Part shown: positions 12,319-38,399 of the stretch, in pieces | Layout of the letters: every line of letters begins with the position of its first letter | Position numbering within the stretch: position 1 is the first letter of the stretch | Assembly (NCBI RefSeq): GCF_006345805.1 | Contig: NW_021835239.1 | Location: forward strand, 1 to 41,094 | Reading direction: 5' to 3' | Source: Octopus sinensis | Lineage: Eukaryota | Length of the DNA: 41,094 bases | Made by a program: the position numbers and the translations under genes | The notes under the pieces: generated by a model | Databases searched by the model: none | Told to the model about the DNA's origin: nothing | The model's input: only the letters and a program-made list of their open reading frames with translations

Positions 12319-13346
12319 TCAGCTAAGCTTTTTTAATCTTGAAACATGTACGTCAGTAATCTTAGTTGTCTCATGAACAGTGGAGTTGTAATTAAATACA
12401 ATGTCTTTAAGAATGTCCAGATAACGTCCGAATTGATCACGTGACCCACTTGCGGAAGAAATCCATCTTTTAATCGATTGATTAAATCTATTTCTTTAAC
12501 GATAACTTTTAAACCTTTCAACTTGGCCCTGGATCCATGGAGCTCTTGCTCTGCCGAAAACATGTTTTATTGAATACTTTTCGCATAATTCATCCATAGC
12601 GGTATTCTTAAATTCCTTACCATTGTCCGTGTGCAAAATGACCGGAGGCCCTAATAGAACACTTATTGGAAATGGACTTACCAATATAATAAAACGCTCG
12701 CTGGAATAGACTTGTTATTTCTTCAACTGTCTTCGTTTTTGACATTTCCACAACAACATACTTGGAAAAAGAGTCTATAATTACTAAATCTAAAAATATA
12801 AATCGAATGTAATACCCAGCAAAAAGAATCATTTAGAGAGGAGTAACGTCTAAGATTTATCAAATCAGCGATGTATCTGTCACGAGGTCTCTTAGCGATT
12901 ATTAGAGTTATTTGAGGCTTTGTAGCCATCAATTTCTTTGACTAACAAATATAGATCAAAAAATACCTGACAAAATGAACATTTTGACACAATCTGAGCA
13001 ACTTCGGATCGGGCAACATCGTAATAACGATTACGAAGTTTGTCGAATAGACGATCTCGTCCAAACAAAGTGATCCATATTATGTTCTGACTGACCATGT
13101 TTAACAATAGCTAACCTCGATGTGTTTTAGCTTTAGCTCATATTCCTCGACCGCAAAAAAACGACGTTCAGTATCTTCATGTAAGATGTAAGTTTTTCCG
13201 TCTTTAAAGCGGAATAGATTCGAAATTTTTCTTAGTCTGTATCTTTTTTTCTTGTCGACATCTTTGAAAGATTTTGGATCGCGATCAGAATTAAGATAAT
13301 CCTTAATTTGTTCTAATTCTTCCAAAAAAAGCTTCACTAAAACCAT
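12319..13346 (-). pseudogene. Ginger-type (rve, HHCC) integrase/transposase copy A, five tiny introns, 3'-truncated
   Basis: Spliced product: MVLVKLF...HIE|SEHNMDHFGRDRL...CSFCQ|SKKLMATKP...PRDRYIADL...FCW|ILVIIDSFSK...YYIG|PPVILHTDNGKEF...QGQVER|FNQSIKRW. Introns at 13091-13115, 12942-12966, 12790-12815, 12651-12681 and 12488-12514. It has a 4-nt duplication (TTTG) and an inferred 1-nt deletion after the third intron. Confidence 0.88.
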
Positions 13347-13413
13347 GTGGCAAATTGAAATAATTATTTTTTTTATTAGTTATAATATGTCACCGTCCGC
13401 TGAATGGACCACG

Positions 13414-14638
13414 CCGTTGAGTGGACCGACAACTTTTTATTAAAATAAAAATGTAATTTTTATGAAATAGATGACAATTGAATTATTTTAAGTTAATAGA
13501 TAATATTATAGCTAATAAAAAAATTATTATTTCAAATTGCCGCATGGTTTTAGTGAAGCTTTTTTTGCAAGAAATAGAACAAATTAAGGATTATATTAAT
13601 TCTGATCGCGATCCAACATCTTTTAAAGATGTCGACAAGAAAAAAAGATACAGACTAAGAAAAATTGCTTATGACAACATTCTTGTGGCAGCGGACAAAA
13701 TGATAAAGAGACGAAAGTGGAAATACGACGAAGATGCGATAATTGAGGGAGATCGGGTGATTTTAAGAACTGATTTGGACTCAAATCGACCAAAGCTGCC
13801 TTGTAATGGAGACTTGTAAAGTTAGGGCTTAATAGGGGTTTCTGTCAAGTTAGAGTTGGTTTTAAAAATTAGGATTTAGTAAAAGTTTGATATTAATTGG
13901 ATTGGTTACAATTAGGGTTAGGGTTGGTTACGTTAAGCGTTAGGGTTTGGTTAGGGTTAGGGTTGGCTCTTAAAATTAGGCTTAATTATGTTAAGCGTTA
14001 GGGTTTGGTTAGGGTTAGGGTTGGCTTTTAGAATTAAACTTAATTATGTTAAGCGTTAGGGTTTGGTTAGGGTTGGCTTTTAGAATTAGGCTTAATTATG
14101 TTAAGCGTTAGGGTCTGGTTAGGGTTAGGGTTGGCTTTTAGAATTAAACTTAATTATGTTAAGCGTTAGGGTTTGGTTAGGGTTGGCTTTTAGAATTAGG
14201 CTTAATTATGTTAAGCGTTAGGGTCTGGTTAGGGTTGGCTATTAGAATTAGGCTTAATTATGTTTAGCGTTAGGGTTTTGTTAGTGTTTGGTTGGCTTTT
14301 AGAATTAACTTAATTATGTTTAGTGTTAGGGTTTGGTTAGTATTTGGGTTGGCTTTTAGAATTACGCTGATATTGTTAATTTAACTTACTAGTTTTTTTA
14401 AATAAAAGTAATTTTTTAATTAATTTGTAATGGATAACCACTAAAAATAATAAAAATACGTTAATTAATCAATATTCTTTTTAATTATTGGGTTTGTTGG
14501 TTTTGTACATATCTAATTTTTTCAGAAGTCACGAAAACCATTAAAAATAGCTTTAAGATGGGACTTAGAAAAATTAAGACATATTTTATACGGATAGAAT
14601 TAATAAAAATGACATTTTGAAATTGGTCCATTCAACGG
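13414..14638 (+). mobile_element. Internally deleted sister copy (A') of the integrase element, bounded by 14-bp TIRs and containing a telomere-like array
   Basis: CCGTTGAGTGGACC (13414-13427; second copy 13397-13410) versus GGTCCATTCAACGG (14625-14638), 13/14 inverted match. ORF from ATG 13544 joins the N-terminus of copy A directly to an integrase C-terminal segment (EGDRVILRTDLDSN). No TSD found. Confidence 0.7.
13900..14360. repeat. Telomere-like (TTAGGG-rich) minisatellite with 52/58-bp units
   Basis: Unit GGTTGGCTTTTAGAATTAGGCTTAATTATGTTAAGCGTTAGGGTTTGGTTAG(GGTTAG). Confidence 0.95.
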
Positions 14639-14639
14639 G

Positions 14640-15800
14640 AGGCCAAGTTAGACTTGCTAACCAGGAAACGAAACATATGCATTGTATGCTACATCGATAT
14701 GCACTTGCTGCAAAAACATTACCTTCAGATTTAAGATATGTTCTCGATGATGTCGTACATATCATAAATTATATTAAAAAGAGTGCTTCAGACTTATTTG
14801 CGAAGAATTTGAAAAGGATGGAAAGGCTTTGTTATTCCACACGGAGGTGAGATGGCTATCTCGGGGAAACATTCTTGCAGAGTTTTTTCTTTGAGGAATG
14901 AATTATCTGAATATTTTATTTCGAAAACCATTCAAATCATCGGAATTTATTTCGAAATAATGGATAGTTCATGGCTATCTAAACTTGCTTACTTGAGGAT
15001 GTCTTTTCTCGTATAAATTCACTCAACAAATCGCTTCAGGGAAGACATGAAACAATAATTGATTTTGTGGAAAAATTAAGTTTGTTAACTGTTTCATATT
15101 AATTATTAGTGCTTTTTTGATGAAGTTAACACTGTGGAAAAAAAAGTAAAACCAAATAATTTTACTATGTTTGAATCTTTTGAAGAACAATCTGTAAAAT
15201 AGATGCATTTGAAATCAAAAAAATAACCGAACTTATTTATGCACATTTTACATATCTTCAACAAGAAGTAATAAATTTTTCCAGAATTGAACGAAATTGA
15301 TTTGAAATACATTCGTACACCATTCAGTGTTGATCCACGTTTGGTCGATGAAAATATCGAAGAGGCTTTTATTGACATGATCAATAATTCAAACGCAAGA
15401 GATTTGATGAAAAACTTGCTTTATCAATTTTTGTTGCGAAATGTGTAAGCATTATCCTTTTGTAAGCGCAATGCATTAAATTTGTTGCTTATATTCCCGA
15501 CAACATATTTATGCGAACATGGCTTCTCAGCACTTCTCAATATAAAAAATAATCATCGCGCAAGACTGAATATTGAAGATGACATCAGGGTTTGCTTGTC
15601 GACAACCGAGCCTCTTATTGAAAAAATTGCCTCGAAAAAACAATATCAACCTTCTCACTAATTTTCTCTATTGATTTAATAAAAAATTTTGTTTTTAGAT
15701 AAGTAAAATTTTTTTGACAAAAACTTAATAATATGTAGGGGTCCGCAAAATTTTTCATTTACTCACAAGGTTCGCGGACAAAAAAGGTTGAAGACCACTG
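14640..15800 (+). mobile_element. hAT (Buster/Charlie) transposon 3' half, decayed
   Basis: HCMLHRYALAAK, FHTEVRWLSRG, AFLMKLTLWKK, TTYLCEHGFSAL. Terminal GGTTGAAGACCACTG ends at 15800, followed by an nnnTAnnn-type site CACTAGGG. Confidence 0.85.
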
Positions 15801-15824: not shown

Positions 15825-18800
15825 ATGCTTATCAAAATAAGTCATTTTGTGTGTTGTTTATATAATTCTTGTGGTGAGGTGAGTGAGCGAAATATAATGA
15901 AAGAAGAAAACTCCAAGACGATGGAAACTCTTCGGATAGTTGGGAGGGATCCCTCTATCTGTTATGGGTGTAATAAGATCAACACCAGGAAATGTGGCGT
16001 TTACTGTTCAATGTGTAATAAATTCTGGCATATTAGCTGCGCGCACCTTACCAAAGCCGCAGTGAAATTACTCCGGCGCTGGAGCTGCCACTGTTGTATG
16101 GCTTTACTCGGAATCGCGGCTTTGCAGCATCAGTCTCCTTCGCTTTATGAACCCAAATCAGAACACTATATTCTCAAAATTTCCAACTTACGGAAATCTA
16201 AGAAGATACCATTACGTATCCCTAAACAGGCTCGGATCTCAGCGGCAAACTGCTTGTGCGATCTTATCACTGATGCGCTAAGCTCCGGGGGGACCATTCT
16301 TGGATCCGTCTCCTCTCTTTTGCACCTTGTGTGTTTGGACAAGCAATTGATGGTTCAGTACAAAAGAAGAGTCTCTCGGCTGCCATTAAGTCGAACTCTG
16401 CGAGATTGGATGTCTCATGGATTGATTTCGATTGTGAAGCGACCAATTACCAAACGTGCATCACGGAAAAATCCCCCCAGTGGTTCAAAACCCAAGTTAG
16501 TCGTAAACTCATGGATGGCGACATCCGTGCGGCAGTTCGGGTCCTTTCGTCCGCTGATTCACTTGCTGAATCTACTGCCGAGACTTTGGAACACCTCAAA
16601 AACAAACATCCGATGCCCCCAGATGACTTACGGGAGTTTCCCACACGAGACAATGCAATTATACTGTCAATTTCTGATGATGAAATTTTGGAAGGGATTA
16701 AATCTTTCAGACCGAGTAGCAGTGGGGGATTTGATGGTCTCCGGCCGAGTCATATAAAGGACGATTTCCCGACTGACTATGGAGACTGGAATCCGCCTGA
16801 TCAAGTGTATTACCAAGCTTGTCGAACGGATTGTCAATGCTGAGATTTTAGGCTTTGCAAGGGATCTACTTTTCTGTTCACACCTTATTGCTTTCCGAAA
16901 GAACGATGAAGGAGTCCGCCCCATTGCAGTCGGTAATGTCTTCCGGAGGCTCGCATGCAAAATTGCAGCCCGAAGAGTCTGTCCCCGTGTTGCCGCTGAA
17001 TTATTCCAGTCCAACTGGGAGTTGGTGTTTCCAACGGATGTGAAGCTGCTGTCCACGCGACAAGAGCTTTTTTTTCACCTGACACAAGACATTCCCCAAA
17101 TTCCTTTGCGGTGAAGCTGGATATCTCAAACGCGTTCAACAGTCTGAGAAGGGACTGTATGCTGGAATCGTGCTCGCAGCGTACCCCAGAGATCATGAGT
17201 CTGGCTCACCTTGCTTACGGGTCCGAAAGTTCGCTTGTCTTTGACAAACACATTGTCCGTTCCACGGACTGGAGTCCAACAAGGTGACCCTTTTGGGCCC
17301 TACTATTCGCTCTGTCAATCGACGAGGTGGCTCGTAATGTAAAGACACCTCTCAACCTTTGGTACCTTGACGATGCCACTATTGGTGGCCCTGTTGATGT
17401 CGTCTTGGATGAGTTATATAAAATTGTTCCTGCCCTGGCAAAAATGGGGCTGATAATCAACACCAAAAAAACTGAGATCATAAATATCTCAGTCCCAATT
17501 CAAGACTTTGGCTTAGTAATGGAAAAGATTTCAGAAATCTTGCCAGACACAAAACAAACACGCCTCAACGATGTTTATTTTCTTGGGTGTCCTTTCGGAG
17601 AGTCCGAAGTGCAAAACCACCTCAGAGCTAAGAGTGTCGAAATGTCCCGTTTTACTGAACGCCTCTCTCTACTCGACTCCCACACGGCCTTTTTCCTCCT
17701 CAAAAATTGCATCCACGTGCCCAAACTGTTATATTTATGAGATGCTCGCCCTGCTTTATACAAGATGAAATATTGCATTCTATCGATGATACGTTAAGAT
17801 TGTGTGCCGAGTGGATCCTAAATGTCCGTTTCGATAATGATGGGTGGACCCAGTGTAAACTACCTCTTAATTCTGGCGGAGCTGGCCTAAGATCCGCCCT
17901 GGACCTTGCCCTCCAGCTTTCCTGTCCTCTCACTCATCCTGCCGAAGGCTATCCTTGGAGATTCTACATAAATCCCCCGAATCTTCTTTGGACAGGCCTT
18001 TTGAAGATGGATGTATGCTGTGGAAGGAATCAGGATTAAAATTCCCGATCCAAACATCACTCCAACAGAGCTGGGACAAATTACGCTGCGAATTCACCGC
18101 AGACAACCTGGCAATGAGGCTCGACCAGCACCGCCTCGCCTGCTTACGCTCTGCAGCTGTGCCACACAGTGGGTCATGGCTGAATGCTATGCCAATTGCT
18201 GGCCTCGGAACATTATTAGAGGATGACTGCATGCGTATCGGTACTGCACTGAGACTCGGACTTGACATCTGCGAACAACATCGTTGTAGATGTGGAAAAA
18301 TGGTTGACGTCAAAGGTGTACACCCACTCTCTTGCAAACGAAGTGCTGGCCGAGCTCCTCGGCACTCCGCTATTAACAATGTTATCTTAAGAGCTCTTGA
18401 GTCGGCGGGCTTCCTTCGATCCTAGAGCCAGTGGGCTTAGATCGTGGAGATGGGAAAAGACCCGATGGAATGACACTTTTCCCTACTCCTGTGGAAAATC
18501 GTTGGTTTGGGATTCAACGTGTGTTGACACCCATTCCAAAACTAATATGATCTCTTCTGCTGTTCTCCAGGTTCTGCAGCAGATGCTGCAGAGCAAAGAA
18601 AAATTGCCAAATACGCAAATCTTGGACAACGGTACCGCTTCGTACCTATCGCTGTGGAGACTTCTGGGGTAACCGGCCCTCTTACGACTTCTTTCATCAG
18701 AGAAGTCGGAGGAAAAGTTGCTAGGCGACGTGGGGAGCCTCGAGAAGTGTCATGGTTATTCCAACAAATTGGAATAGCTGTCGTTCGCGGCAATGCACAC

Positions 18801-18878
18801 TCCATCATGCGTGCAACCGCAAGTGCCTTTTAATCATTGACTAACTTATTTCAATAATTACTTTGAATAAAAAAAAAA
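15825..18878 (+). mobile_element. CRE-clade RLE non-LTR retrotransposon with N-terminal PHD finger, frameshifted
   Basis: C4HC3 finger (CYGC...CSMC...HISC...WSCHCC); RT motifs SSGGFDGLRPSH, RPIAVGNVFRRL, LDISNAFNS, QQGDP.GPLLF, WYLDD; RLE RGDGKRPDG...WDSTCVDT...AVETSG; AATAAA and A-tail at 18866-18878. Confidence 0.88.
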
Positions 18879-19269: not shown

Positions 19270-20029
19270 GTTTGGCGCTTGGGTCTTAACGGGTTTCTAA
19301 ATGTTACTCGTTTTGCTCTTTCGTCTGTTAAAACTTTTTTTCCGTTCACTTTTTAGAGCACCTACCTTGACGCTAGATTTTGTTTTCAACCCATCCGCGA
19401 CACTTTTAAAAATGTTTTTAAAGCTCGCGGTTTTTTCATTTGGGCATCAGTATGTCTTATCTTTTGTTTTTGCTTTTTACTCCTTTTGTTCTTCTGTGTG
19501 CTTTTGATTATCATTGTTATCTTGGATAAAATTTATTCAAGATCTTATCCTGCACTTGTGGCCTATGATGGTTCTTGGGATCATAACGATACGGGCTATC
19601 GACACTATGGTCTTGTTGCCCGTGTCCATGTTTTGCAGTGAACGTTTTAAACATCCCATAATTCCAATGAAACAATTAAAAGACTATTCATTCGTCAATT
19701 TCACATTGAACAACCTAACCCGCGCAAAACAAGCCACGCACATCCTGTGTGTTCTGGCTTTCGCTCCAAATTCAGGTCCGCGTTACGTTCATTCGCACAA
19801 CAACATGACCTTACACTTCATTGTTTTGAGGGCGCTCGTCCGGATGGTTATGCCAGCACTCGTGGTTGGCACGTTGCCCCGGACGTCACGATGCACGTCG
19901 TGGACGACCCAATTAACTCGATCTGGTCGAGCTTGTCGACGTGGATTACTACGTTGACTTGGCTGATATTTGTTGTAACTTGCGTCCCGTTTGCCTTTAT
20001 ACGGCAAACCCGAAGCTTACCGGTGGTGT
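19270..20029 (+). pseudogene. Nodavirus-like protein A endogenous viral element, part 1 (hydrophobic anchor and capping/methyltransferase domain)
   Basis: Hydrophobic stretch (FFIWASVCLIFCFCFLLLLFFCVLLIIIVIL), HPVCSGFR (H-x6-R, 19741), GWHVAPDV, LVDVDYYVDL (DVDYY at 19938-19952), RPVCLYTANP. About three frameshifts. The 5' boundary is approximate. Confidence 0.8.
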
Positions 20030-23000
20030 GTGTCAACTGAAAAAATGTGTCAACTGCGGTTCTTCGAGCCACTTGGCAAATTATCGGGGCTGTGAGAAAG
20101 CTAAAGAAGCTTCAAAGCTGAAAAATGATAAAATTCTGGTTCAGAAACTGTTAAAAGAAGCTTCGGAGAATGCTAAAATCAACCAAACAGACATAAAAAA
20201 TTTACCCTTGAAGCCATGGGCGGGATGGAACGTTCCAAGAGTTAAGAAAACAATTGAAGCTGGAACACAGACAGAGGAAACAACTATATCTCACTCGGCG
20301 GTGCAGACTTTGTCGACTTCAGGAGCTGGGTCAATGACGGGTCGACCTCGAGCTGACTTAATTAGTGAGCTCGAAAGATCTATTAAGGACGTGAGCAGAA
20401 CTAAAAAAGATGCCAAGCTTTTACTCGGTTTGGTGGCTCTCCTAAAAGAGGGAAGCAGCCACCAAATAAATCAAACGTGACCAGGATTACCCTGGTTAAT
20501 GCCCGCTCTCTTCGAAAGCGGGCAGCAGAGCTGATAGCTCTTATCAGCACAGTTCAGATGGATGTATTTATCATTAACAAGACGAAAATGAAGAAATCTG
20601 GAAGTATCACTATTCCTGGATACAGCTCGATTGATATTCCTTGGCATCCTGGTGCTAACGCCGGCACAGGAACATCAATATTTTACAAAAAGTCTATTGA
20701 CATTCGGAATCCAAGAATAATTGAACAAAATGTATGTGAATTAGCATCCATTGATTTAAAAACTTCTAATGGATGGATAACCGTTGGAGGTATATACTCC
20801 AAAAGGTTGAAAGATTATTCGTCGATTGTCAAAAATTTTATGGAAGGAAATGAAAATCCAATTCTTGTTGGAGACTTAAATGCGAAGCATACTGCATATG
20901 GGTGCGTGAAGTCAAATCAGGATGGAAATTGTTTACTTAAGATCAAAAAAACCTCAAATTTTCAAATTTTAACGTCTGAAGAGCTTAACCACTTTCAGCA
21001 GCAAGGTGGTGATCGATTAGGATTGTTTATTGTTGCAAATGCCTTAAGTGGTTTGTGTGACCGCCCTTATGTTGAAAATGATGTTGGGAGTGACCATCTT
21101 CCGCAAACGATGAAACTACGAACGGAAGCAGTTCTCACTGAGGATGTATTTCTTGGTTATAATATCAGCAACATTAATTGGAATCATTTTAACTTTTATA
21201 TGTCTATGAAATTGGCAAATACTCAAGAATTGAAAATACTAAATCTTGACGAGATCAATTATTTGGATGAAAGAATGAGGAACATTATTCGAAGTTATCT
21301 GGAGGACTATGGAAAAAAGAGGTTTCTCTTCTCGTACAAAAATCGATTGATAAATGAAGAGCAATCCAAACTACTTCGTGAAAAAAGGAACTTGGAAAGT
21401 AAACTAAAGCGGTGTTGGGACCCGCAAGACGCTATCTTCCTCAAACAAAGAATAAAATCGATTAAAAACTTATCAAAGGAATTATCTAAGGATATAGTAG
21501 AGGAGAGCTGGAAAAAAGAATGCTCTAAACTCTCTCACAAAAATCCGAATTTTTGGAAACTTTTCTCAAAGATGAGTTCTGATAAAAAGGGTGAAGAGAT
21601 AAAACTCAAGTCCAGTGATGGCAATCTGATTCCAAGAGAGGAAGTACCTGAGAAGTTAAAAGAGCAGCTAGCTAAGATTCAAGAAGTGCACCCTTTGTCT
21701 ATTATTTCTCAGACTATACAAAATGAGACGTGTATTTGGGAGTTACTATCGCTTACGGAGGGACCATTATGTGGAGCTATTTCTATGGAAGAAATCAAAT
21801 TAGCAATACACGGATGTAAAAATAAATCCCCTGGTTGGGACTACATACCGATGATTATCTTCAAAAAGGCGGGAATGCCTTTATTATGTGAATTATGGAA
21901 GTTATTTAACTCTTCGTGGAGTATTGGACATGTTCCCCAAGCATGGAAGAGGACAATTGTTCGCATGATCCCGAAGAAAGGAAAACCAAGTTCGGATCCT
22001 GCAAATTACAGACCAATCAGCCTCATATGTTCTATCTCAAAAATCATGGAAAAAATTGTCTTCAAAAGACTATCAACTTATATTGAAGATAAACAGTATC
22101 TCTTGAAAGAGCAATGGGGTTTTCGACGGAACAAGGGCACTGGAAATTGCTTTTCACTGTTAAAGGAGGCCATATCTACAGCACAAAGGAAAAAAGAGTA
22201 TCTTACGGCTGCATGTCTAGACATATCAAAAGCATTTGATAGCGTCTGGCATGCCGGGCTATTACGAACTTTATACAGTTTTAACGTTGGAAAGGCAGCC
22301 CTAGTTTGGATGAAGAGTTTCCTCTCGGAAAGAGAATCGTTTGTACGGGTCGGTAACCAATTATCGAAAGAGAATTTTGCTTAAGAGAGGAGTTCCGCAG
22401 GGATCTGTCATCAGTCCACTTTTATTTAACTGTGTGATGTGCGACATCCCTCAAGTGGATCTCCCTAGCATGGAGATGGTCATCTACGCAGATATTTTAA
22501 TTATGGATTTCTCTATGAGCAAATCAATATCGTGGAAAAGAACCCATTGTCATATCGAAAAAATTGGCAAATGGTGCCAGGATAAAGGCTTGTCTTTATC
22601 TTTTGAAAAAAGCACTGTTTGCTGGATCGGTGGAAGGAGAAGGAAACATGATGTTTGTATTAACACCGGAGCGATAAAACCCGTGGATGATCTTAAATAC
22701 CTCGGAAAAGTTGTGGATGCAACTGGTTCGTTCAATATGTATATAAGGAAGAGAAAGAACAAGGCTACCCAAATGTTGAAAGCTCTGATGCGATTCCAGC
22801 TAAAACCGGAAACGTTCTTATACGTATACTCTGCGTGTATAGAACCCTTCCTGATCTATGGATCTCAAGGATGATTCGGAAGCTGCAAAGGAAAGAAACA
22901 TATTGATCTTTTGGAGAAAACGCGGAGATATGCCATTAAACTGGCACATGGCTTAGACTTAAAATCCAAACTAACCCCAGAGCTGGAGGGATCGGTACGA

Positions 23001-25329: not shown

Positions 25330-26154
25330 TGGGGATTCAAATCTGTGTAGCTTCAATGACGGATTCGTCCCACAATCTTTTATTATTCGTTTCTAAAAAT
25401 AAATACATCGTAAACTTACCATTAAGTTCATCTTCGACAAACGATGGCTCGTTATTTTCATCTAAATTATAAATAAGATTATAACCTGGTATTTTATGAA
25501 TCACAGTGTTAATTCCAGAAATACCCCTAAACTTTTGAAGGGGGTCTCATTGATCGCCGAGTGGTGTGTCGTATTATAGGAAAAAGTTACTTTGTCTAAA
25601 AATTGTTTCCAATTTTTACGTATTTTTGGTTTTTGAAATCCAACCCGTTGTCCGTTTGCAAGATCTGAATATCCAATTTGATAAAACAATTTTTGGAATT
25701 TATTCACCACTTCTTCAATTAAATTTCAAGTCTTACCAGAAGCAGTTTTATTTTTTAAAGATTTGCGGACAACAAATTTACTGTCGATGTCAATAATTGT
25801 CAGTACCCAATTAGATCCATCGTTAAACTCTTTATATCTTCTAATATCAATAAGATCCGCCTGGAATCTTTCATTGGGTTTTCCTGCAGTTACATGGTAA
25901 TTAGAATCCGACACCTAGATACATTTTTTTAAATACTTTCAATGATAGGGCAGATTTACAAATTTCGCAGTCTTTTATAATTTGCTCGATGATTGGATGT
26001 TTTATAGTGAAATAGAATTCACTGCACTTTTTCTGAAGCTTTCGTATTCCCCAGTGGGATTCTTGGTGAATGGCAAATGCTAGTGTCCCCATCTCGATTT
26101 CATTGTCCAGACAAATGACCAATTTGTGTTTTTGGTTATTCTCGTCCTTTAGAT
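25330..26154 (-). pseudogene. Ginger-type integrase copy B, interrupted by a hAT MITE, internally deleted, with tiny introns
   Basis: HQESHWG...CEIC...LK|VSDS...PNERFQADLID...VLTIIDIDSK...TAS|EVVNKF...LQTDNG...YNTTHHSAINETPF. Introns at 25915-25936 and 25713-25736, candidate at 25393-25419. The N-terminus continues beyond 27158. Confidence 0.85.
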
Positions 26155-27150
26155 CAGGTGTTCTCAACCGGGGGCGAATCGCCCCCCTAGGGGCGGAAAT
26201 TTTGTACAGGGGGGCGATAATTTTTTACAAGGGGGCGATTTTAAAATAGCACGCTGTTTTTACATTCTTGTTTGGTATCTAAAATGTCTTCTCGCTCAAA
26301 TAAGAAAAGTCGTCATTATCAAAACGAATATTTAAAATATGGGTTTATTCAAAGTACTGAAGATACATAACAGCCTTATTGTCTTATTTGTCAATGTTCT
26401 TTCTCAAATGAGGCGATGAAGCCATCACGATTACAGGATCATCTAAAACGCAAGCACCTGGATAAATCAAATCGTTATTCACAAAGCCAGTACATGATGG
26501 TTATTTAACATTTATTTATATGCAGTTGTGGGTGCGCACATCGCTTCTTATAAAATTGCTGAAATTATTACGAAAACTTCCAGTTCTCATACTATTGCAG
26601 AAAATGCAATAATTCCATCACTGAAAGTAATAATATCGGATGTAATGCATCAAGATGCTTCTAAAATTATTAAAAGTCTACCTCTTAGCAATGATTCGAT
26701 TATTATTATTATTTAAGCCAAACAAAATCACCGTCTTAACCATTAACTAACACGTTCAGGTGATTCGTCGAAGAATTGGTGAAATGGGTGACAATGTAAA
26801 GGAAATCCTTATTGAAAGACTGAAGCGAAGTAAGTTTTCATTACAAATTGATGAGAGCGTCATTGTAGATAGTAAAGCTGTTTTAATGGGATTTAAACCC
26901 GACATAGAATACTTAGCGAGTAAACATCAATACCAAGAGTCTCACTAATAATTTTTAATAAAAATTCAATTTTTTACATTTGATTTATTATTTTATATTT
27001 TGATTTTTGAGTTATATACAAAAAACAACCAATTAAGGGACAATGCCCAAAAATTTTTAAATTGTATGTGGACAAGGGGGCGATAAAATTTCAAAGGGGG
27101 GCGATAAAATATCTAAGGGGGCGATGAACAAAAAAGGTTGAGAATGCCTG
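26155..27150 (+). mobile_element. Non-autonomous Buster/Charlie hAT derivative (996 bp)
   Basis: TIRs CAGGTGTTCTCAACC / GGTTGAGAATGCCTG (13/15). Perfect 8-bp TSD CTTTAGAT at 26147-26154 and 27151-27158. BED-finger and transposase remnants. GGGGCGA subterminal repeats. Confidence 0.95.
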
Positions 27151-27770: not shown

Positions 27771-27778
27771 CTATAAAG

Positions 27779-29839
27779 CAGTGATTCTCAAGTGCGGCCC
27801 CTAGGATTTAATTTGCGGCCCCTAGGTTTTATAAATGTTTTATTTTTTAATTTAATATTTTTAAATTTTATGAATAAAAAAATGTCACGTTTTTTATTTG
27901 TTGTTGTGATGTCTGATTCTAAACGTTGTCGAAAACTTTCCGAGGAAAATAGGATTTTTCAACACATCTGGGAAGAAAAATATTTCATTATTGAGATCAA
28001 TGGAAAGGCTCTTTGCCTAATATGCCATTCTATTATTGCAACTCTAAAAACGTATACAATCGAACGGCACTACCGTTTCCACTCTATTCTTTATGACAAA
28101 TTCACTGGTGTTTCTCGGACGAAAAAACTAAAACAAATGAAAGAAGATTATTTAAAACAATCATTTACTTTCAAAAGTGGCACATATTCGTCTAATATTA
28201 ACCTGGCATCATACAAAATTAGTTACCTATTGGCTAAAAATATGAAGCCTTATTCTGATGGCGAATTATATAAAACGGCAATCGAAATATTTGCATCGGA
28301 ATGTTGTTCGCCCGCTGTTTTCGATATTGCACACAAGTTACCTCTAAGTAACGATACTGTTACTAGAAGAGTCAGTGATATATCTGATAATCTGATTAAC
28401 GAACTTTTACAGTATGCAAATTGTTTTGTAATTTTTAGAATTTGTAAAGATTTTCAATATTATTCTTTTGCGCTTGATTGTTCCAAAGATATTTCAGATA
28501 TCGAACAATTAGTAGTGTTTATAAGGGGAGTAACATCTGACTTTCGAGTATACGAAGAATTTTTTTCATTGAATTCACTTCACGGAGAAACTAAAGGAAC
28601 ACAGATTTTTTCTCCAATTGTGAAATTAATTGAAGATTATCAACTGGATCCAAAAAAATTAGTTTCAATTTCAACTGATGGAGCCCCTTATATGATTGGC
28701 AGTAAAACTGGTTTTCGTGGACGTATGAATAAATGGAGGTGTGATAATAACTGGACTCCAGTATTATGGCATCATTGCATTATTCATCAGGAAAACCTAA
28801 TTTCCAAAAATATTAAAATGGAAAATGTTTCTGAAGTAGTGATAAAAATTGTCAATTGGATTCGGGCGAACGCCTTGAATCACCGAAAATTTAAAACATT
28901 TTTAACTGAAACCGATTCGGATTATGGCGATGTCCTTCTTTTCTCAGTAGTAAGATGGTTAAGCCGTAGCTCTTGTCTCAAAAGGTTAATTTCTTTTATT
29001 TTATATTTAGATTTTATCAACTTCTCCCTGAAATTATTTTATTCACTGAAAATAAAGTGGACAATGCATTATTGAAAGACAATAGATGGGTAGCAGATTT
29101 AGCATTTTATGTGGATCTATCGGTGCATCTGTCTGCCCTAAATGTCGAACTACAAGGGGAAAATAAGCTAAATTATCAAATTTATGGATATATAAATGCC
29201 TTCGTTAAGAAATTAATTTTATGGAAAGCGCAGATATCAAATAATGATTACACACATTTTCCTTATTTGTCAGAAAATTCCGAAAGTGGCTCAACTGATA
29301 AATATTTAAAAATAATTGAAGATTTAAATTTGCAATTTGATGCAAGATTTCAGGTTTTTAGTATTTAATTTAAGCTGACAGAGCTTTAAAGAAGGTGCAA
29401 ATTCAATGAGATTATTTGCATCTCCATTAATTATGAAAAGTGAGGAGGTTTCCGGGATTTACCAACTGGAATTGATTGATTTGCAAAATGATGTTGAACT
29501 GAAAAGTTTGTTCAACAACATTTCAATAATTGACTTTTATTCGAGAATTCCAGAGAACCGATTTCCGAATTTAGTCAATAATGCAAAGAAAAATTTAGCA
29601 ATGTTTGGATCAACATATGTCTGCGAATCGACATTTAGTAAACTCGTTCGAATTAAAACAAAGTTTCGCAGCAGATTGACTGATACTCATCTGAGTGATT
29701 TGTTACGTACTTCAACAAGTAGAATTAAACCTAATTTTGATTATTTGGTTAATAAATAATTCTTAAAAATTATTTGCGGCCCCTGTAAATTTTTTTTTTT
29801 AATTTGCGGCCCCTGAGCAAAAAAGCTTGAGAATCACTG
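27779..29839 (+). mobile_element. hAT (Buster/Charlie, GTF2IRD2/EPM2AIP1-like) transposon with perfect 14-bp TIRs
   Basis: CAGTGATTCTCAAG (27779-27792) and CTTGAGAATCACTG (29826-29839); subterminal TGCGGCCCCT repeats. The flanking 8-mers differ, so no TSD. Confidence 0.93.
27909..29759 (+). CDS. Apparently intact hAT transposase, 4 exons, 589 aa if started at ATG 27909
   Basis: Exons 27909-28411, 28439-28984, 29011-29353 and 29382-29759 total 1770 nt with no internal stop. Splicing restores ELLQ|ICKDFQYYSFALD, RWLSRSSCLKR|FYQLLPEI and ARFQ|SFKEG. Also contains STDGAP, HCIIHQE and STYVCESTFS. Confidence 0.85.
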
Positions 29840-31519: not shown

Positions 31520-33880
31520 CCAAGTCTGGTCTTTTCCAGCCTCGACAAAAGAGAGAACCTAATATGTAGAGCAACATTTTTATTGACTTAAAAAAAATAA
31601 AAATTGCCCTTAAAAAGTCAATGTAATTGACCTTAAAATTTTAAAAATTGACCAAATAATTGACCGTAAAAATACTACTTTATTTTCATATATAAACTAC
31701 GTTTATGAAAATTTAAAGTAATTTTATTCATCGTTTATCGAGTTATTTACAATTAAGTAATATTTTACATTATCCACTTTAAAATTCTTATCCTTGGTTA
31801 AGATTTTGTTAAGAATCGAAAATGATCGTTCTACTGTGCACGAAGTTGCCTGACATTCAATCAACAAAGAATAATCTAAAGGTGAAATGGAATGATCATC
31901 GAAATTCATAATTTTTGTGATATCATTGGAATTCATCCTTTTGATTTTTTATTCCACACACGTCTTCTTTAAAATCCAATGTTTTCAAATAATTGAATGC
32001 TTTTTTTATAGTAAAATTGGTCGATTCTAAATCATCAAGCAAATGTAATAAAGGTGAATATTGTGATATTATCGTCGTTAGATCTTCATGAAGTTGTTCA
32101 TTAAATAAACATTCTTTCGCTCTTTTAATGAGCAAAGAATTTCCTTCTAAGGAAGTGCATACTTGAATAACATTTGGCAGGTTTGTAGCATAGTAAGAAA
32201 CAGCTTTAAGCCAGCTTCCCCATCTCGTAACTATTGGTTCTGGTGGGTACCCAATTTCCTTAAACAATTGTCTTCGATAATTGTTTTTTACAACAAGTGC
32301 TTTGATACAAGCAATCAATTTATCAACTTCGGGATAATATACTTTTATTTTAAGTGCACAATTATGCACTAAATTAGCAAAACATGTGATATGGTATAGA
32401 GTGGAATATAATAGCTTGAGAGTATTTCCTGCAGAAACCATATATGGAGGAGCATCGGTAATAAGGAGAGAAAAATTGTTTCTTTCAACATTCATTTTCC
32501 GAATAGTGTCATCAATTATTTAGAAGAATTCGGAGAGGAATCAATTTTTATACAATCTATTAGGTAAGATCTTTGCGGATTTTCTAACGTTCCAACTAGA
32601 CAATTCACAAATTTGTTTCTCCCAACATCAGTTTCGTCCACAATCAAAAAAACCTTAACAATTATACTATTCCAATAGACTAACTTTCTTATTTGAAATT
32701 AAATTAATTATTTTAGATATCTTTTGTTGTGCTAAAATTTCTACCATATTGCGGCAAGTAAACTCTGAAGGAAGTGGATGCCCGATACTTCCAAATAAGT
32801 TGATAATTGCTCGATTTCTCAATTTATAGAGCGGAATGTTTGCGGATACAAATGCTTCTGTTACGTCTGTTGCAAAATTTCTGAAGACATAATTTGGAGG
32901 AACAATATTCAATTGTTTTTTATTTGTGGATATATTATTTGTTCGGGAAGAGTGTTTCTGTGTTTCCCTGTGTTTGTTCACAAAAAATTGTTTCTTGCAT
33001 GTCACATGTAACTCACATAATTTACAAAAAAGCATTCCATTTGGTGTAATTGTAAACTCTTTAGGATATTTTTCACAAATATTTTTAGCTTTTTTAAAAT
33101 CCGAAGGTTTATTTTTAGGCATAAATACACTATAATTTAGTTTAAAATTTGTTACAATAAGAGACAAATGTCACTGCGACTATTTTAAATTTATTTTGAT
33201 GCTTTAAAGAATATTATTTAAATTTTTATTTAAAAATTGACCTAATTAAAAAAATTGACCTGAAAATCTAAAAAGTTGACCAAATTGACCTAAAGAACTT
33301 TTTATATAAACTTTTTTTTGACTTTATTTTAATTTAATCATTATTTTTAGACTTAAGTCTAACTCTGGATTGAAGTTGACTTTATTGACTTATGTTGCCC
33401 TACTAATATGGCTTATTGAAGTGTTTGTGACTTCAATAGATAACTTAAAGAGTGTGGAAGTAGAAAAACTGCACAAATACGACATTTTAGCTAGTGAATT
33501 ACAACTGATTCACAAGGCTAGGGTGAAGATTGTGCCAATTGTTATTACGTGGAATGGAATCGTCTCAACAATCTACCGCAAGTACATGGAGCTCCTTGGG
33601 ATTGAAGAACGTGTTCGGTCTTACATCCAGACTGTAACGCTGAAGGCCACTCTGGAGAGCATGTTTGTCGAGTACAAGCATGGCTTCAGTGAAATCCTGG
33701 ACTCTGCAAATTCCGTAAATAGGGACTGGCGGAAATATAATTTCTCTATGAAGATCAGCAAGTCCCTTAAGAGACCCAAAGACTACACGCACCAGGAGGA
33801 GATTGAGGATAATGGCGGGGAAGATCAAAGTGGAGTCATGGGGAACTTGGAAAGCAAAAATTTGAGAATCGTCTAATTAT
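31520..33880 (+). mobile_element. R4-like endonuclease/3' fragment split by the hAT at 31567-33402
   Basis: Rejoined frame LDKRENLIW|LIEVFVTS...EKLHKYD...IVPIVITWNG...YIQTVTLK, homologous to 10821-11300. Confidence 0.8.
31567..33402 (-). mobile_element. hAT transposon of the CGGBP1-like type, decayed, with 8-bp TSD and one 31-nt intron
   Basis: TIR TAGAGCAACAT / ATGTTGCCCTA (10/11). TSD CTAATATG at 31559-31566 and 33403-33410. Motifs FCKLC, ANIPLYKL, VDET, LITDAPPYM, HITC..LVHN, PIVTRWGSW, VERSFS. Intron 32654-32684. AATTGACC subterminal repeats. Confidence 0.9.
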
Positions 33881-35435: not shown

Positions 35436-35733
35436 AATTTGTGATATTAAAACAAAGAGATAGAAGAAAAGCGTTAAGTCCCTGCGGCAAGGACGCAGTG
35501 TGCGTTGACACGAAACCTCGTACCATCCCTTTAGGGGAATTCTTGAAACCAAAAGACGAAGACTGGAAAATCCAAACTATCAAAAGGTCTACATGAGCGG
35601 AGGGCCAATCTTGCTGAACATGAATGTTAAAAATGGAAGTTGGAACTTTCGCAAGGAAGTATAGACCCTTTACAGTCGAATTAAAATAGAAATACATAAA
35701 GAATGACAAGGCTATAATAACACTCTGAACAGG

Positions 35734-36850
35734 ATGACGGAATTTAATCAAGACCTGGTAACGTCGAGTCTTGCTGTATTCTTCCTCAATGAATCCGTCC
35801 TCAATGTACACCTCGATGGTCCTGGATGGGCCCAATGCTCGCTCCCATTGAGATTTGGAGGTGCGGGAATCCGCACTGCATCCGATGTGGCACTTCCGGC
35901 ATATCTATCCTCCCTTTCGATGTGCAACAACCTGGCCTCTGAGATCCTACTCAAACCTTTCTGATCTTGCCTGGACGGTGCTTTGTCGGATGGGCTTATT
36001 TCCTGGGATCGCTCCTTTTCTGAGAGGCCTGGTGATTTCTCCTCCCAAAGGTGCCTGGGACACTATCGCATGCCGAACGTGTGTGTCTGAGCTCTCGGCA
36101 ACCCTTGACCAACATCGCCTGCCATGCCTTCGTGCGGCATCCGCCCCTCACTCTGGCAACTGGCTGAATGCTCTCCCTCTCTCCAGTATCGGGACGTGGT
36201 TAGACGATGCTGCCATACGATTCGGAGTCGCTCACCATCTCGGCCTGGATGTTTGCGTAAAATACCGCTGCAGATGCAGTAAGGACGTTGACGAAAAGGG
36301 ACTACACCCACTTTCCTGCAAGAGGAGCGCAGGCAGGGAACACAGACACAAGGCCCTCAATGGAATCGTGAAGGCCGGTCTCGAATCGGCAGGCCATTCG
36401 TGCCTCCTCGAACCGGTCAAACTCGATCGGGGAGACGGCAAAAGGCCTGACGGGATGGCAATATTCCCGTACTTGTCAGGGAAGGCCCTCGTATGGGATG
36501 TTACCGTTGTGGATATCTTTTCAAAGTCGAGGATCCATTCTTCCGCCGCGAACACTTGTTCGGCTGCAAACCACGCTGAAAAGATAAAAATACAAAAATA
36601 TTCTTCGCTCGCGGACCGCTACCGCGTTACGCCAATCGCCCTGGAACCGCGGGAAAGGAGACTGACTCGTTCCTCAAAGAGGTCGGGAAGTCCATCGGGA
36701 AGAGGCTCAAGGACTCGAGAGAGGGCCTCTGGTTCCGCCAGCGCATCGGCCTGGCCATTGTTCGGGGCAACGCACACTGCGTCCTCGCCGCTGGAACTTA
36801 ACGATTTTCGGTGTTAGTTGTTTTTTTAAATAAAAAAAAATGCAAAAAAA
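35734..36850 (+). mobile_element. CRE-like element, 3' third
   Basis: WAQCSLPLRFGGAGIR, PHSGNWLNALP, RCRC...HPLSC, DRGDGKRPDG...WDVTVVD; A-rich tail at ~36829-36850. Confidence 0.85.
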
Positions 36851-36906
36851 ATAAATATAATTTCATAGTGCACGTTTCTTCGGTTTTTGTTGACTGCTTT
36901 TTTACA

Positions 36907-37045
36907 ATGCCTAAAAACAGGAGTTCCAACACTAAGCGAATTTCTTCTATTGTTAAAAAATATCCTAAGGAGTTTTCATCTTCACTGGATGGAAAATCAT
37001 TCTGCAAATTATGTAATTCTTACGTAACTGCTAATAAGTGTCACT
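36907..37045 (+). pseudogene. N-terminal fragment of a CGGBP1-like hAT transposase
   Basis: MPKNRSS...KYPKEFS...FCKLC, homologous to MPKNKPS...KYPKEFT...FCKLC of the 31567-33402 element. Truncated at the next TIR. Confidence 0.75.
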
Positions 37046-37148
37046 CGCCATAACTGAAACGGGCGCCAGACGTGTAACAATTTGGCCTTGCATTTTAACC
37101 TTCAAATGTCATTTAATTGTTGTCTGCCGGTAATTATTATTTTTGTAA

Positions 37149-38399
37149 ATGAGAATAGCTAATGCAGTCAAAGATGATAATGAATATAATGATATTCTTC
37201 AGTATTTACAACATGAGAAATTTCCAGAGCGATTGTCAAGAACACAAAGATCAAGATTTTTACAAAAATGCAAGAATTTCATTTTAATCGGAGGTATTTT
37301 CCTATCTCATTTCAGGAACACTTTATTTTAATGAAATAAATGGTGAAAATAAGCAAGTAATTTGTTTGAATGATCACGAAACAATGAAATATCATTGTGA
37401 TCGGATTCATTCTCAGTTTCACTTTGGATTAAACAAGATGGAAGAATACTGCAGAAATAATTTTCTTCTTATAAAAAGATTCATAATCAGAGAAGTAACT
37501 TCTATGTGCCCAAAATGCAAACAAACTGATCCATTGATTAAAAATAAGTCTACAATTGTTCGTATTGTAGCAAAATCACCACGAGAACGGTTTCTTTAAT
37601 CATTTATTCTAGGTACCAGATTGATTTGGTTGATCTATCACTTTATTCTTCTTTAAATAATTCATATAAGTATCTAATGAATGTAATCGACATTTATTCC
37701 AAATTCTGTTTTGCAAGAGCTATTCTCAATAAGGAAGCTGTTACAGTATCAGAGTCCCTAAGACGTATTTTTGAATCTTATGGCCCCCCAAAAATAATCC
37801 AAACTGACAATGGAAAAGAATTTGTGAATTCGGAAATAGATTCCTTATGCCAACAATTTAAAATAATCCATAAGAGAGGACGACCAAGGCATCCCGAGTC
37901 TCAAGGCCAAGTAGAGCGTTGCAACCAAACTCTCTGCAGATGGCTTCAAAAGGAACTATTTGGAAAAGAAAAGATATGGACTGCTGCATTAAGCAATGTA
38001 GTATATAGATACAATATTTCTGTACATTCTGCAACTAAACTATCACCATTTATGTCATTTTTTAATACGCGAGGATATAATGTTTCCTACTTTGACCAGG
38101 AAGCAAGCTTAGAGGAAACTGAAACAGAAGACATTACAAATGAATCATACATTTCTCGTATGGAAAGAAATAGTTCACTCCAAAATTGACAAATCGAAAA
38201 TTTTAAAGTTGGAGATCACGTACTATTAAAAAAAGATTTTGATACGAATCAAAAAACTAAAAAAAGGAAATTAGAATCTTTTTTCTTCGAAAAAACTTTT
38301 ACTATCAAAGAATTAATTTCCCAAAATAGAATAATGATAGAAAATGAAGATGGAACCGAAAAAACGGTTTTTACTCTCAAATTAAAAAAATTTAAATAA
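37149..38399 (+). pseudogene. Integrase copy C: 3 exons, 402 codons, a single premature TGA
   Basis: Introns 37294-37315 (22 nt) and 37590-37612 (23 nt) restore LIG|GTLYF and PRER|YQIDLVD. Contains HHCC finger, VID, IQTDNGKEF and QGQVER. TGA at 38187, with the frame open again to TAA at 38397-38399. Confidence 0.88.

What the first reader, a model, noticed from the sequence alone, without database searches (positions are those of the whole stretch)
12319..38399. Independent, repeated gain of 22-31-nt introns across DNA transposon families but not retroelements
Seen: 13 introns in total (integrase A five, B two, C two, Buster hAT three, CGGBP-like hAT one), plus weaker candidates at 15080-15109, 25393-25419 and 26500-26525. 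Among the three homologous integrases no intron position is shared: A after HIE, CQ, W, in G and in R; B after LK and in E; C in G and in the R of RER. About half sit at AG|GT proto-splice contexts, and donors are degenerate (GTAT, GTTA, GTTT, GTAA). Of the 13, ten are non-3n, two 3n introns contain in-frame stops, and one 3n intron is stopless. No intron was needed in R4, CRE, LINE or pogo ORFs. Knowledge: avoidance of stopless 3n introns is the NMD-linked rule described in Paramecium, and RNA intermediates purge introns. Inference: an active tiny-intron-gain process in this host, possibly providing splicing/NMD control of transposase expression or helping elements pass as host genes.
Basis: partly seen in the sequence, partly recalled or inferred. 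Interest (0 to 1): 0.85.

Follow-up and report, generated by a model that had tools for sequence, protein, structure and literature searches.

The report
Tiny host-type introns in DNA transposons
Cut-and-paste transposon genes in this window are interrupted by real 22-31-base GT-AG introns of the size known for dicyemid parasites, while the retroelements have none; this is a tidy case of a known pattern, not a new mechanism.

Summary
For 12 of the 13 proposed introns, alignment to intronless homologues alone picks an excision of exactly the proposed length (22-31 nt). A GT..AG pair sits among the few best-scoring excisions (joint chance about 1e-19). The thirteenth (A3) has a GT..AG of 26 nt where homology needs 25, so this copy carries a 1-nt defect. 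One weak candidate (15080-15109) behaves the same way; one is untestable and one gives the wrong frame. True frameshifts in the same elements, and every frame break tested in the R4/CRE-like elements, the LINE and pogo, are plain 1-2-nt indels.

The host is most likely a dicyemid (36% GC, TE-rich). A 93-94% identical Buster copy lies beside a squalene epoxidase gene with 25-29-nt introns, on a contig filed under Octopus sinensis. Ultrashort introns are already published for Dicyema japonicum.

Intron positions are not shared among the three integrase families or the two GTF2IRD2-like hATs. The closest outside homologues checked are uninterrupted in genomic DNA. Lineage-specific gain by insertion is therefore the better reading.

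An active gain process, an introner-like source and an NMD-linked 3n rule are not supported by these data. Ginger transposases with 0-4 introns are already known.

The parts
12319..13346 (-). Integrase A gene (Ginger-like H2C2 + DDE integrase). It is C-terminally truncated and has five introns.
   Evidence: tblastn to P0001-P0018. The spliced protein hits Pfam rve (8.4e-15). Excision scan.
13087..13115 (-). Intron A1: 29 nt, GTTA..CAG, phase 0.
   Evidence: Homology-only scan peaks at 29 nt. GT..AG is among the 18 near-best excisions.
12942..12966 (-). Intron A2: 25 nt, GTAT..TAG, phase 0. It lies one residue after the CxxC motif.
   Evidence: Scan peaks at 25 nt with GT..AG present.
12790..12815 (-). 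Intron A3: the GT..AG is 26 nt, but homology needs a 25-nt excision. Probable intron plus a 1-nt deletion in this dead copy.
   Evidence: Scan peaks at 25 nt with no GT..AG in that length class. tblastn excess is 25 nt.
12651..12681 (-). Intron A4: 31 nt, GTAAGT..TAG, phase 1 (within a Gly codon).
   Evidence: Scan peaks at 31 nt. tblastn excess is 31 nt.
12488..12514 (-). Intron A5: 27 nt, a multiple of three with an in-frame TAA, phase 2 (within an Arg codon).
   Evidence: Scan peaks at 27 nt (263.6 bits against 256.8 for the 21-nt alternative).
25337..26137 (-). Integrase B. A dead copy: 5'-truncated, with an internal deletion of the catalytic core and plain frameshifts. It has two validated introns.
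25915..25936 (-). Intron B1: 22 nt, GTAT..TAG, phase 0.
   Evidence: Scan peaks at 22 nt. tblastn excess is 22 nt.
25713..25736 (-). Intron B2: 24 nt, a multiple of three with an in-frame TGA, phase 1.
   Evidence: Scan peaks at 24 nt.
25393..25419 (-). Untestable candidate: 27 nt, GTAAGT..TTTTTAG, a multiple of three with no in-frame stop. It lies in the non-conserved C-terminal tail of integrase B.
   Evidence: Sequence only. There is no homology to test it against.
37149..38399 (+). Integrase C gene. After removing two introns it is intact except for one in-frame TGA at 38187-38189.
   Evidence: (rve, 4.3e-18). Homologues align straight through the TGA.
37294..37315 (+). Intron C1: 22 nt, GTAT..CAG, phase 1.
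   Evidence: Scan peaks at 22 nt and the GT..AG excision is in the top-scoring group.
37590..37612 (+). Intron C2: 23 nt, GTTT..TAG, phase 2.
   Evidence: Scan peaks at 23 nt. tblastn excess is 23 nt.
27779..29839 (+). Buster / GTF2IRD2-like hAT element with 14-bp perfect terminal inverted repeats (CAGTGATTCTCAAG). The coding sequence is 27909-29759 and reads as 598 aa once H2 and H3 are removed.
   Evidence: Pfam hits to Dimer_Tnp_hAT and zf-C2H2_12.
28412..28449 (+). Intron H1: 27 nt, a multiple of three with no in-frame stop. Two GT..AG registers are possible (28412-28438 or 28423-28449).
   Evidence: A 27-nt excision gains 12-14 bits over no excision against 80 homologues. It would also be tolerated as 9 extra codons.
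28985..29010 (+). Intron H2: 26 nt, GTTA..TAG, phase 2.
   Evidence: The scan peaks at 26 nt and the GT..AG excision is the best. tblastn excess is 26 nt.
29354..29381 (+). Intron H3: 28 nt, GTTT..CAG, phase 0.
   Evidence: Scan peaks at 28 nt. tblastn excess is 28 nt.
31722..33122 (-). CGGBP1-like hAT gene. It has one intron and two plain frameshifts (near 32520 and 31943), so this copy is dead.
32654..32684 (-). Intron G1: 31 nt, GTTA..AAG, phase 0.
   Evidence: The scan peaks at 31 nt and the GT..AG excision is in the best group. The two frameshifts in the same gene peak at -1 and -2 nt.
14653..15658 (+). Second GTF2IRD2-like hAT ('K'). It is 5'-truncated and has six plain frameshifts and one nonsense codon.
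15080..15109 (+). The GT..AG is 30 nt while homology wants 29 nt. Its position differs from H1-H3.
   Evidence: Scan peaks at 29 nt (200.5 bits against 185-195 for other lengths). Position mapped.
26500..26525 (+). Unresolved weak candidate in an internally deleted hAT fragment (26284-26945). The 26-nt GT..AG leads into the wrong frame.
15960..18830 (+). R4/CRE-like retroelement. All of its frame breaks are plain indels and it has no introns.
   Evidence: tblastn chains to 40 homologues give a median excess of -1 or -2 nt at the well-sampled breaks.
19917..22871 (+). LINE with an endonuclease (APE) and a reverse transcriptase. It contains a 659-aa uninterrupted ORF. The RT break at about 22340-22365 is a plain frameshift.
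38619..40037 (+). Uninterrupted 473-aa reverse-transcriptase ORF of an R4/CRE-like element.
   Evidence: Colinear with homologues without insertions.
2889..4261 (-). pogo transposase (DDE_1 and HTH_Tnp_Tc5). It has two breaks that look like plain frameshifts and no intron.
   Evidence: for the domains. for the breaks, read by inspection of the frames without homologues.

Best explanation
The window is a transposon graveyard from an animal whose spliceosome uses ultrashort introns, most likely a dicyemid such as Dicyema japonicum.

Six cut-and-paste families carry introns in their transposase genes: three Ginger-like integrase families, two GTF2IRD2/Buster-like hATs and one CGGBP1-like hAT. The introns are ordinary U2-type GT-AG introns of host-typical size (22-31 nt, AT-rich).

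Each intron is extra DNA relative to intronless relatives. For the non-3n introns and the 3n introns with stops, it must be spliced out of the mRNA to give a full-length transposase.

DNA transposons move as DNA, so an intron acquired in a master copy is inherited by all its descendants. Retroelements copy themselves from RNA, so any spliceable segment is lost at the next round.

Positions differ between families, and the outside relatives checked are uninterrupted. The introns were therefore most likely acquired separately, by small insertions that the host's very permissive splicing signals could remove. They were acquired after each family settled in this lineage.

What is shown: the existence, boundaries, size class, non-shared positions, intronless outgroups and absence from retroelements. 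What is inferred: actual splicing, the direction of change (gain rather than loss), host identity and the insertion mechanism.
For: - Homology-only excision scans recover the exact GT..AG length at 12 of 13 junctions, jointly about 1e-19 by chance.
- Known frameshifts in the same genes peak at -2 to +4 nt. This serves as an internal control.
- Independent tblastn chaining gives 22-31 nt of excess DNA at the transposon breaks it resolved, against -1 or -2 nt at retroelement breaks.
- The Buster copy reads as 598 stop-free codons only after H2 and H3 are removed. A second copy, 93-94% identical, carries the same three segments. The introns therefore belong to the family, not to one copy.
- Host context: 36% GC and TE-rich match D. 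japonicum (36.7% GC, 49% repeats, mean intron 38 bp; PMC6736024). That species has a median intron length below 30 bp (PMC13644364).
- The contig holding the second Buster copy carries a squalene epoxidase gene. Its Pfam SE and FAD domains become continuous only after five GT..AG introns of 25-29 nt are removed.
- Intron positions are not shared.
- The outgroup loci checked are uninterrupted: 1806 nt for 601 aa and 1434 nt for 477 aa, on contigs over 1 Mb.
- The introns are AT-richer than the flanking exons (24% against 33% GC).
Against: - There is no transcript evidence, so splicing is inferred.
- Most copies here are dead. A is truncated. B has a deletion and frameshifts. G has two frameshifts. 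C has a TGA. So the copies themselves show no current selection.
- A3 and K1 are each off by one base.
- H1 is a multiple of three with no in-frame stop and could simply be nine extra codons.
- The integrase families are only 30-32% identical. Ginger transposases with introns exist elsewhere (PMC2836005), so ancient introns with differential loss are not excluded.
- A2 and B1 lie only about 6 residues apart in a poorly conserved linker.
- Host identity rests on composition, intron size and a contig filed under Octopus sinensis.
Confidence: 0.72

Rival explanations
1. The introns are ancestral to the transposon families. They were acquired in earlier hosts at normal size, then shrank under the deletion bias of this genome, as host introns did. 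The non-shared positions reflect differential loss.
For: - Ginger1 transposases in Hydra and other animals carry 0-4 introns (PMC2836005).
- Intron loss is reported as the main force shaping CACTA transposase structure (PMC4158355).
- The three integrases are only 30-32% identical, which leaves much unsampled history.
Against: - This reading needs nine or more ancestral positions in the integrase alone, with complete loss in the sampled outside relatives.
- No position is shared between any two families here.
Confidence: 0.18
2. A dedicated, currently active intron-generating process (introner-like elements or a specific insertion mechanism) seeds tiny introns into transposase genes.
For: - Several families are each affected.
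- Upstream exon ends are enriched for AG (6 of 13, P = 2e-5), as expected for insertion at proto-splice sites. Selection for donor strength would give the same pattern.
Against: - Similarity among the introns is no greater than in shuffled controls (mean local score 5.92 against 5.96).
- There is no tandem-duplication signature (69 matches against a null of 66.9 +/- 5.6).
- The 22-31-nt segments show no terminal repeats or duplications.
- pogo has none.
- Nothing dates the gains as recent.
Confidence: 0.07
3. The segments are chance indels in decaying pseudogenes, or DNA-level eliminated sequences, and not spliceosomal introns.
For: - The copies do carry many genuine 1-2-nt frameshifts.
- By my recollection, not checked here, dicyemids show developmental DNA elimination.
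Against: - GT..AG is present at 12 of 13 homology-defined boundaries (about 1e-19 by chance).
- All lengths fall in a narrow 22-31-nt band that matches host-gene introns.
- Real indels in the same genes are 1-4 nt.
- The boundaries are not the TA..TA type of ciliate eliminated sequences.
Confidence: 0.03

Closest known systems
Ultrashort spliceosomal introns of dicyemids and myxobolid myxozoans (PMC6736024; PMC13644364)
   Same: The size class is the same (median 26 nt here; medians of 22-27 bp are reported). The splice signals are equally reduced ('GTa...AG'; here GTA or GTT ... AG). The sequences are AT-rich.
   Different: Those reports concern host genes, whose intron positions are largely conserved with other animals. 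Here the introns sit in mobile-element genes, at positions not seen in relatives.
Introns in Ginger1 DNA-transposon transposase genes (Bao, Kapitonov & Jurka 2010, PMC2836005)
   Same: The transposases are integrase-type (H2C2 + DDE) genes interrupted by canonical GT-AG introns. The number varies between families (0-4 there; 5, 2 and 2 or more here).
   Different: I did not establish which Ginger clade these belong to. TIRs and TSDs were not found for B or C. The introns here are about 25 nt. I could not compare positions with the Hydra families.
Exon/intron evolution of CACTA transposases (PMC4158355)
   Same: It is the same question: why related DNA transposases differ in intron number and position.
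   Different: That study concludes that loss dominates. Here the outgroups checked are intronless and the introns are pure insertions, which points to gain.
Introners / transposon-generated introns (PMC9860276; PMC12130899)
   Same: Both propose introns created by insertion of extra DNA into coding sequence.
   Different: Introners are multi-copy families with recognisable similarity, and often have TIRs and TSDs. The 13 introns here share no similarity.
Paramecium tiny introns and the rule against stop-free 3n introns (my recollection of the literature, not checked here)
   Same: The intron length range is similar.
   Different: This window uses the standard genetic code and has TTAGGG-type repeats, so it is not a ciliate. 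The 3n/stop bias is not detectable with 13 introns.

Membership tests
U2-type GT-AG spliceosomal intron | GT at the 5' end and AG at the 3' end, at boundaries defined independently of the signals | tested here: met
   Met at 12 of 13 junctions in homology-only excision scans. A3 is off by 1 nt.
U2-type GT-AG spliceosomal intron | Removal restores a continuous reading frame and a gap-free alignment to intronless homologues | tested here: met
   The score peaks at exactly the GT..AG length, 5-15 bits above a frameshift model.
U2-type GT-AG spliceosomal intron | Length and composition match introns of host genes in the same genome | tested here: met
   The squalene epoxidase gene on related contig L003 has GT..AG introns of 29, 29, 26, 28 and 25 nt. 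Removing them makes the Pfam SE (1-265/276) and FAD_binding_3 matches continuous.
U2-type GT-AG spliceosomal intron | A branch-point adenosine upstream of the AG | tested here: inconclusive
   All the introns contain A residues in their 3' half, but they are so AT-rich that this says nothing.
U2-type GT-AG spliceosomal intron | Spliced transcripts exist | not testable with these tools
   No RNA data for this genome were reachable. No near-identical spliced protein turned up in the protein searches.
Introner / introner-like element | Multi-copy introns with mutual sequence similarity | tested here: not met
   Pairwise local scores equal those of shuffled controls.
Intron gain by tandem duplication at AGGT | The 5' end of the intron resembles the downstream exon, and the 3' end resembles the upstream exon | tested here: not met
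   69 matches against a null of 66.9 +/- 5.6 (P = 0.37).
Ciliate-type internal eliminated sequence | TA..TA boundaries and a ciliate genome context | tested here: not met
   The boundaries are GT..AG. Long ORFs read in the standard code and the repeat arrays are TTAGGG-like.
Ginger-type (integrase-encoding) DNA transposon | A stand-alone gypsy-like integrase (zinc finger plus rve DDE core), not embedded in a pol polyprotein | tested here: met
   Pfam rve hits. The homologues are stand-alone proteins of roughly 400-460 aa with rve and Integrase_H2C2. No RT or RNase H lies adjacent.
Ginger-type (integrase-encoding) DNA transposon | Terminal inverted repeats with a 4-5-bp target duplication | tested here: inconclusive
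   No convincing TIR was found around C. A is flanked by a ~100-nt inverted repeat and by inverted telomere-like arrays, which may reflect a palindromic rearrangement.
hAT superfamily (Buster / GTF2IRD2-like) | A hAT dimerisation domain, an RNase-H-like core and short TIRs | tested here: met
   Dimer_Tnp_hAT and zf-C2H2_12 hits. Precomputed FAM200/GTF2IRD2-like domains in the homologues. A 14-bp perfect TIR, CAGTGATTCTCAAG, at 27779 and 29839. The 8-bp target duplication was not confirmed.
Dicyemid genome (host assignment) | Composition, repeat load and intron size of D. japonicum, and an association with Octopus sinensis | tested here: inconclusive
   36% GC against 36.7% published, and TE-rich against 49% repeats (PMC6736024). 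Related contigs are filed under O. sinensis, the host from which D. japonicum was collected (PMC6736024). No marker gene was placed phylogenetically.

The most novel reading that the evidence does not exclude
Transposons that arrive intronless act as natural recorders of intron birth. In this lineage splice signals have shrunk to little more than GT...AG across about 25 nt. Small insertions into coding DNA are then routinely rescued by splicing, so new introns are still being created at an appreciable rate. Dicyemids are otherwise thought only to conserve and shorten introns. A genome-wide comparison of young and old transposon copies would measure that rate directly. The same intron signature would also flag dicyemid DNA inside cephalopod assemblies, or any parasite-to-host transposon transfer.
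Probability: 0.22. Interest if true: 0.65.

Novelty: new member of a known kind. Interest (0 to 1): 0.38.

Why it matters
The finding extends ultrashort animal introns from host genes to mobile elements. These families have intronless relatives elsewhere, so they give a set of introns whose ancestral state is probably 'absent'. That makes them useful material for asking how introns arise when splice signals are minimal.

There is also a practical side. Gene finders that forbid introns shorter than 30 nt will misannotate these transposases and host genes. One example is the chimeric 'squalene monooxygenase-like' model in the Octopus sinensis annotation. The intron signature helps to recognise parasite contigs in host assemblies.

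The contrast itself, with introns in DNA transposons and none in retroelements, is expected from how the two classes replicate.

Tried and rejected
- Bacterial-code ORF lists and direct frame translations through stops were no use for split genes. I replaced them with custom splicing scripts.
- A further candidate that I raised myself (15443-15466, a 24-nt GT..AG with an in-frame TAA in hAT K) was rejected. The scan peaks at 3 nt, so it is a plain nonsense codon.
- A 61-nt excess in the hAT fragment at 26699-26759 looked like a longer intron. It has no GT donor and matches a small palindromic repeat found in an unrelated context on L007, so it is an insertion.
- A ~28-nt gap between the Pfam RT matches in the LINE turned out to be alignment edges around a 1-nt frameshift.
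- Comparing the two Buster copies for selective constraint on splice sites told me nothing. Both copies decay neutrally; in L003 the H2 donor and one candidate H1 donor are mutated, and there are deletions.
- An exact-protein look-up of a window ORF, meant to identify the source record, found nothing.
- I considered a ciliate germline or IES explanation, and an octopus host with parasite-derived transposons. I set both aside because of the standard genetic code, the TTAGGG-like repeats and the tiny-intron host gene on L003.

Full report
**What the window is**

The 41-kb window is 36% G+C and reads in the standard genetic code. It is almost wholly made of mobile elements and repeats:
- a 75-bp satellite (76-2541) and a U2 snRNA gene (2649-2837);
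- a pogo transposase and several non-LTR retroelements;
- two inverted arrays of degenerate TTAGGG repeats;
- three stand-alone integrase genes and several hAT elements.

**Checking the observation**

I re-derived every proposed intron from the DNA. To avoid circularity I then tested them without using splice signals.
- I built profile HMMs from outside homologues: 18 integrases, 80 Buster/GTF2IRD2-like hATs and 57 CGGBP1-like hATs.
- At each junction I excised every segment of -2 to 60 nt within +/-30 nt and scored the resulting full-length protein.
- The score peaks at one length for each junction: 29, 25, 25, 31 and 27 nt for A1-A5; 22 and 24 for B1-B2; 22 and 23 for C1-C2; 27, 26 and 28 for H1-H3; and 31 for G1. 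These peaks are 5-15 bits above any plain-frameshift model.
- At 12 of 13 junctions a GT..AG pair is among the 5-20 excisions within 2 bits of the best. With f(GT) x f(AG) = 0.0025, the chance is 0.012-0.049 per junction and about 10^-18.7 jointly.
- The exception is A3. The only GT..AG there is 26 nt while homology requires 25. A 1-nt deletion in a copy that is truncated anyway is the simplest account.

**Controls**

- The method separates introns from decay. The two real frameshifts in the CGGBP-like hAT peak at -1 and -2 nt. Six frameshifts in the second GTF2IRD2-like hAT peak between -1 and +4 nt.
- An independent measure, excess DNA between consecutive tblastn segments in different frames, gave 22-31 nt at the integrase and Buster breaks it resolved. 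It gave -1 or -2 nt at the well-sampled breaks of the R4/CRE-like elements.
- The LINE RT break is a 1-nt frameshift.
- By inspection of the three frames, without homologues, pogo's two breaks also look like plain frameshifts.
- The 473-aa RT ORF at 38619-40037 is colinear with homologues.

- the range is 22-31 nt;
- ten introns are non-3n, two are 3n with in-frame stops and one is 3n without a stop;
- the donors are GTA or GTT;
- about half of the upstream exons end in AG.

The three weak candidates come out differently:
- 15080-15109 is probably real. Homology wants 29 nt against a 30-nt GT..AG.
- 25393-25419 is untestable.
- 26500-26525 gives the wrong frame.

**Whose genome**

- The Buster element (27779-29839, 14-bp TIRs) is 93-94% identical to a copy on contig VCDQ01009840.1 of the Octopus sinensis assembly.
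- That contig also carries a squalene epoxidase gene. Its Pfam SE and FAD-binding matches become continuous only after five GT..AG introns of 25-29 nt are removed. The contig therefore belongs to an organism with ultrashort introns, not to the octopus.
- Among animals, ultrashort introns are reported only for myxobolid myxozoans and Dicyema japonicum (PMC13644364).
- D. japonicum has 36.7% GC, 49% repeats and a mean intron of 38 bp. The sequenced specimens were collected from O. sinensis (PMC6736024).
- The window shares several transposon families with that contig and with a second O. sinensis-labelled contig.
- A dicyemid origin is therefore the best inference. I did not place any marker gene phylogenetically.

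**What the introns are**

- They are host-type spliceosomal introns that belong to the transposon families, not to single copies. The second Buster copy carries the same three segments.
- The window's Buster copy gives 598 stop-free codons only after H2 and H3 are removed. A family able to amplify must therefore have been spliced.
- Most other copies are dead. A is truncated. B is deleted and frameshifted. C has one TGA. The CGGBP-like hAT has two frameshifts.
- Splicing itself is inferred, because no transcript data were reachable.

**Gain or inheritance**

Evidence favouring separate acquisition by insertion in this lineage:
- Mapped onto a common alignment, the integrase introns fall at columns 88/128/171/207/252 (A), 135/194 (B) and 59/150 (C). 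None is shared.
- The two GTF2IRD2-like hATs share none either.
- Each intron is pure extra DNA relative to the homologues. None is converted coding sequence.
- The two outside loci I fetched are uninterrupted ORFs on contigs over 1 Mb. The remaining homologues were returned as full-length single proteins, but their gene structure was not checked.

Caveats:
- The three integrases are only 30-32% identical.
- A2 and B1 lie about 6 residues apart.
- Ginger1 transposases elsewhere have 0-4 introns (PMC2836005).
- Intron loss dominates in CACTA transposases (title and abstract of PMC4158355).

**What is not supported**

- The introns are no more similar to each other than shuffled controls, and they show no tandem-duplication signature. 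Nothing points to an introner-like source or a dedicated gain process.
- Three of 13 being 3n is unremarkable (P = 0.32). A stop-free 3n intron is expected about half the time. The NMD-linked rule is therefore untestable here.
- The enrichment of AG at upstream exon ends (P = 2e-5) fits insertion at proto-splice sites. It fits selection for donor strength equally well.
- The absence from retroelements follows from their RNA-mediated replication.

**Verdict**

This is a real and cleanly demonstrable feature of a known kind. Introns in DNA-transposon genes are familiar, and the tiny size is the published property of the likely host. The modest new point is that several families seem to have acquired such introns independently. 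That makes them a usable data set for studying intron birth under minimal splice signals.

Noticed in passing
L003 (GCA_006345805.1 contig VCDQ01009840.1) 9626-13334; L007 (VCDQ01001009.1): At least one contig in the Octopus sinensis reference assembly looks like parasite (dicyemid-type) DNA. It carries a squalene epoxidase gene with 25-29-nt introns. The RefSeq model XP_029655163.1 'squalene monooxygenase-like' is a chimera of a dead hAT fragment and part of that gene. A 509-kb contig carries an RT 82% identical to the window's, annotated as XP_029655348.1; whether that contig is parasite or octopus DNA was not tested.
   Followed up: partly
window 11544-14368: Integrase A is flanked by arrays of degenerate telomere-like repeats in opposite orientation (CCCTAA-type at 11544-12170, TTAGGG-type at 13928-14368). 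It is also flanked by a ~100-nt inverted repeat (12150-12252 / 13814-13917). A head-to-head, internally deleted second copy (13475-13816) repeats its N-terminus at 95% (13224-13373 / 13517-13666). This is either a palindromic rearrangement or unusually long telomere-like terminal repeats.
   Followed up: partly
window 26699-26766; L007 21579-21648: A ~61-nt insertion sits inside the coding region of an internally deleted hAT fragment. The insertion has short inverted ends (GAATCACC...GGTGATTC in the L007 copy) and recurs at 93% identity in an unrelated context on L007. It may be a very small MITE-like repeat.
   Followed up: partly
window 76-2837: A full-length U2 snRNA gene (95 bits, model positions 1-192) lies immediately after a ~2.5-kb array of a 75-bp satellite.
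   Followed up: no
L001 (ENA ERZ25039529 contig_57512) 9911-10873: A 320-aa integrase 48% identical to integrase C sits in a contig whose other genes look bacterial (GcrA, TsaD, MurJ, FUR, NifU). This could be transfer into an endosymbiont or a misassembly.
   Followed up: no
(homologue lists): Both the integrase and the CGGBP1-like hAT have named homologues in microsporidia (Enteropsectra breve, Nosema granulosis, Dictyocoela muelleri). These families seem to travel among parasites and their hosts.
   Followed up: no
window 16000-19000 and 34000-37000 versus 12000-15000 and 24000-33000: The R4/CRE-like retroelements are much richer in G+C (42-48%) than the DNA transposons and their surroundings (29-34%).
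   Followed up: no
window 27379-27807 (-) and 36907-37050 (+): There are nested insertions. The Buster element sits inside a Tc1/mariner-like fragment that has its own plain frameshift. Integrase C lies directly after an N-terminal fragment of another CGGBP1-like hAT.
   Followed up: partly
window 38187-38189: There is a single in-frame TGA in integrase C. Homologues align straight through it into the C-terminal domain, so it is most simply a nonsense mutation.
   Followed up: partly
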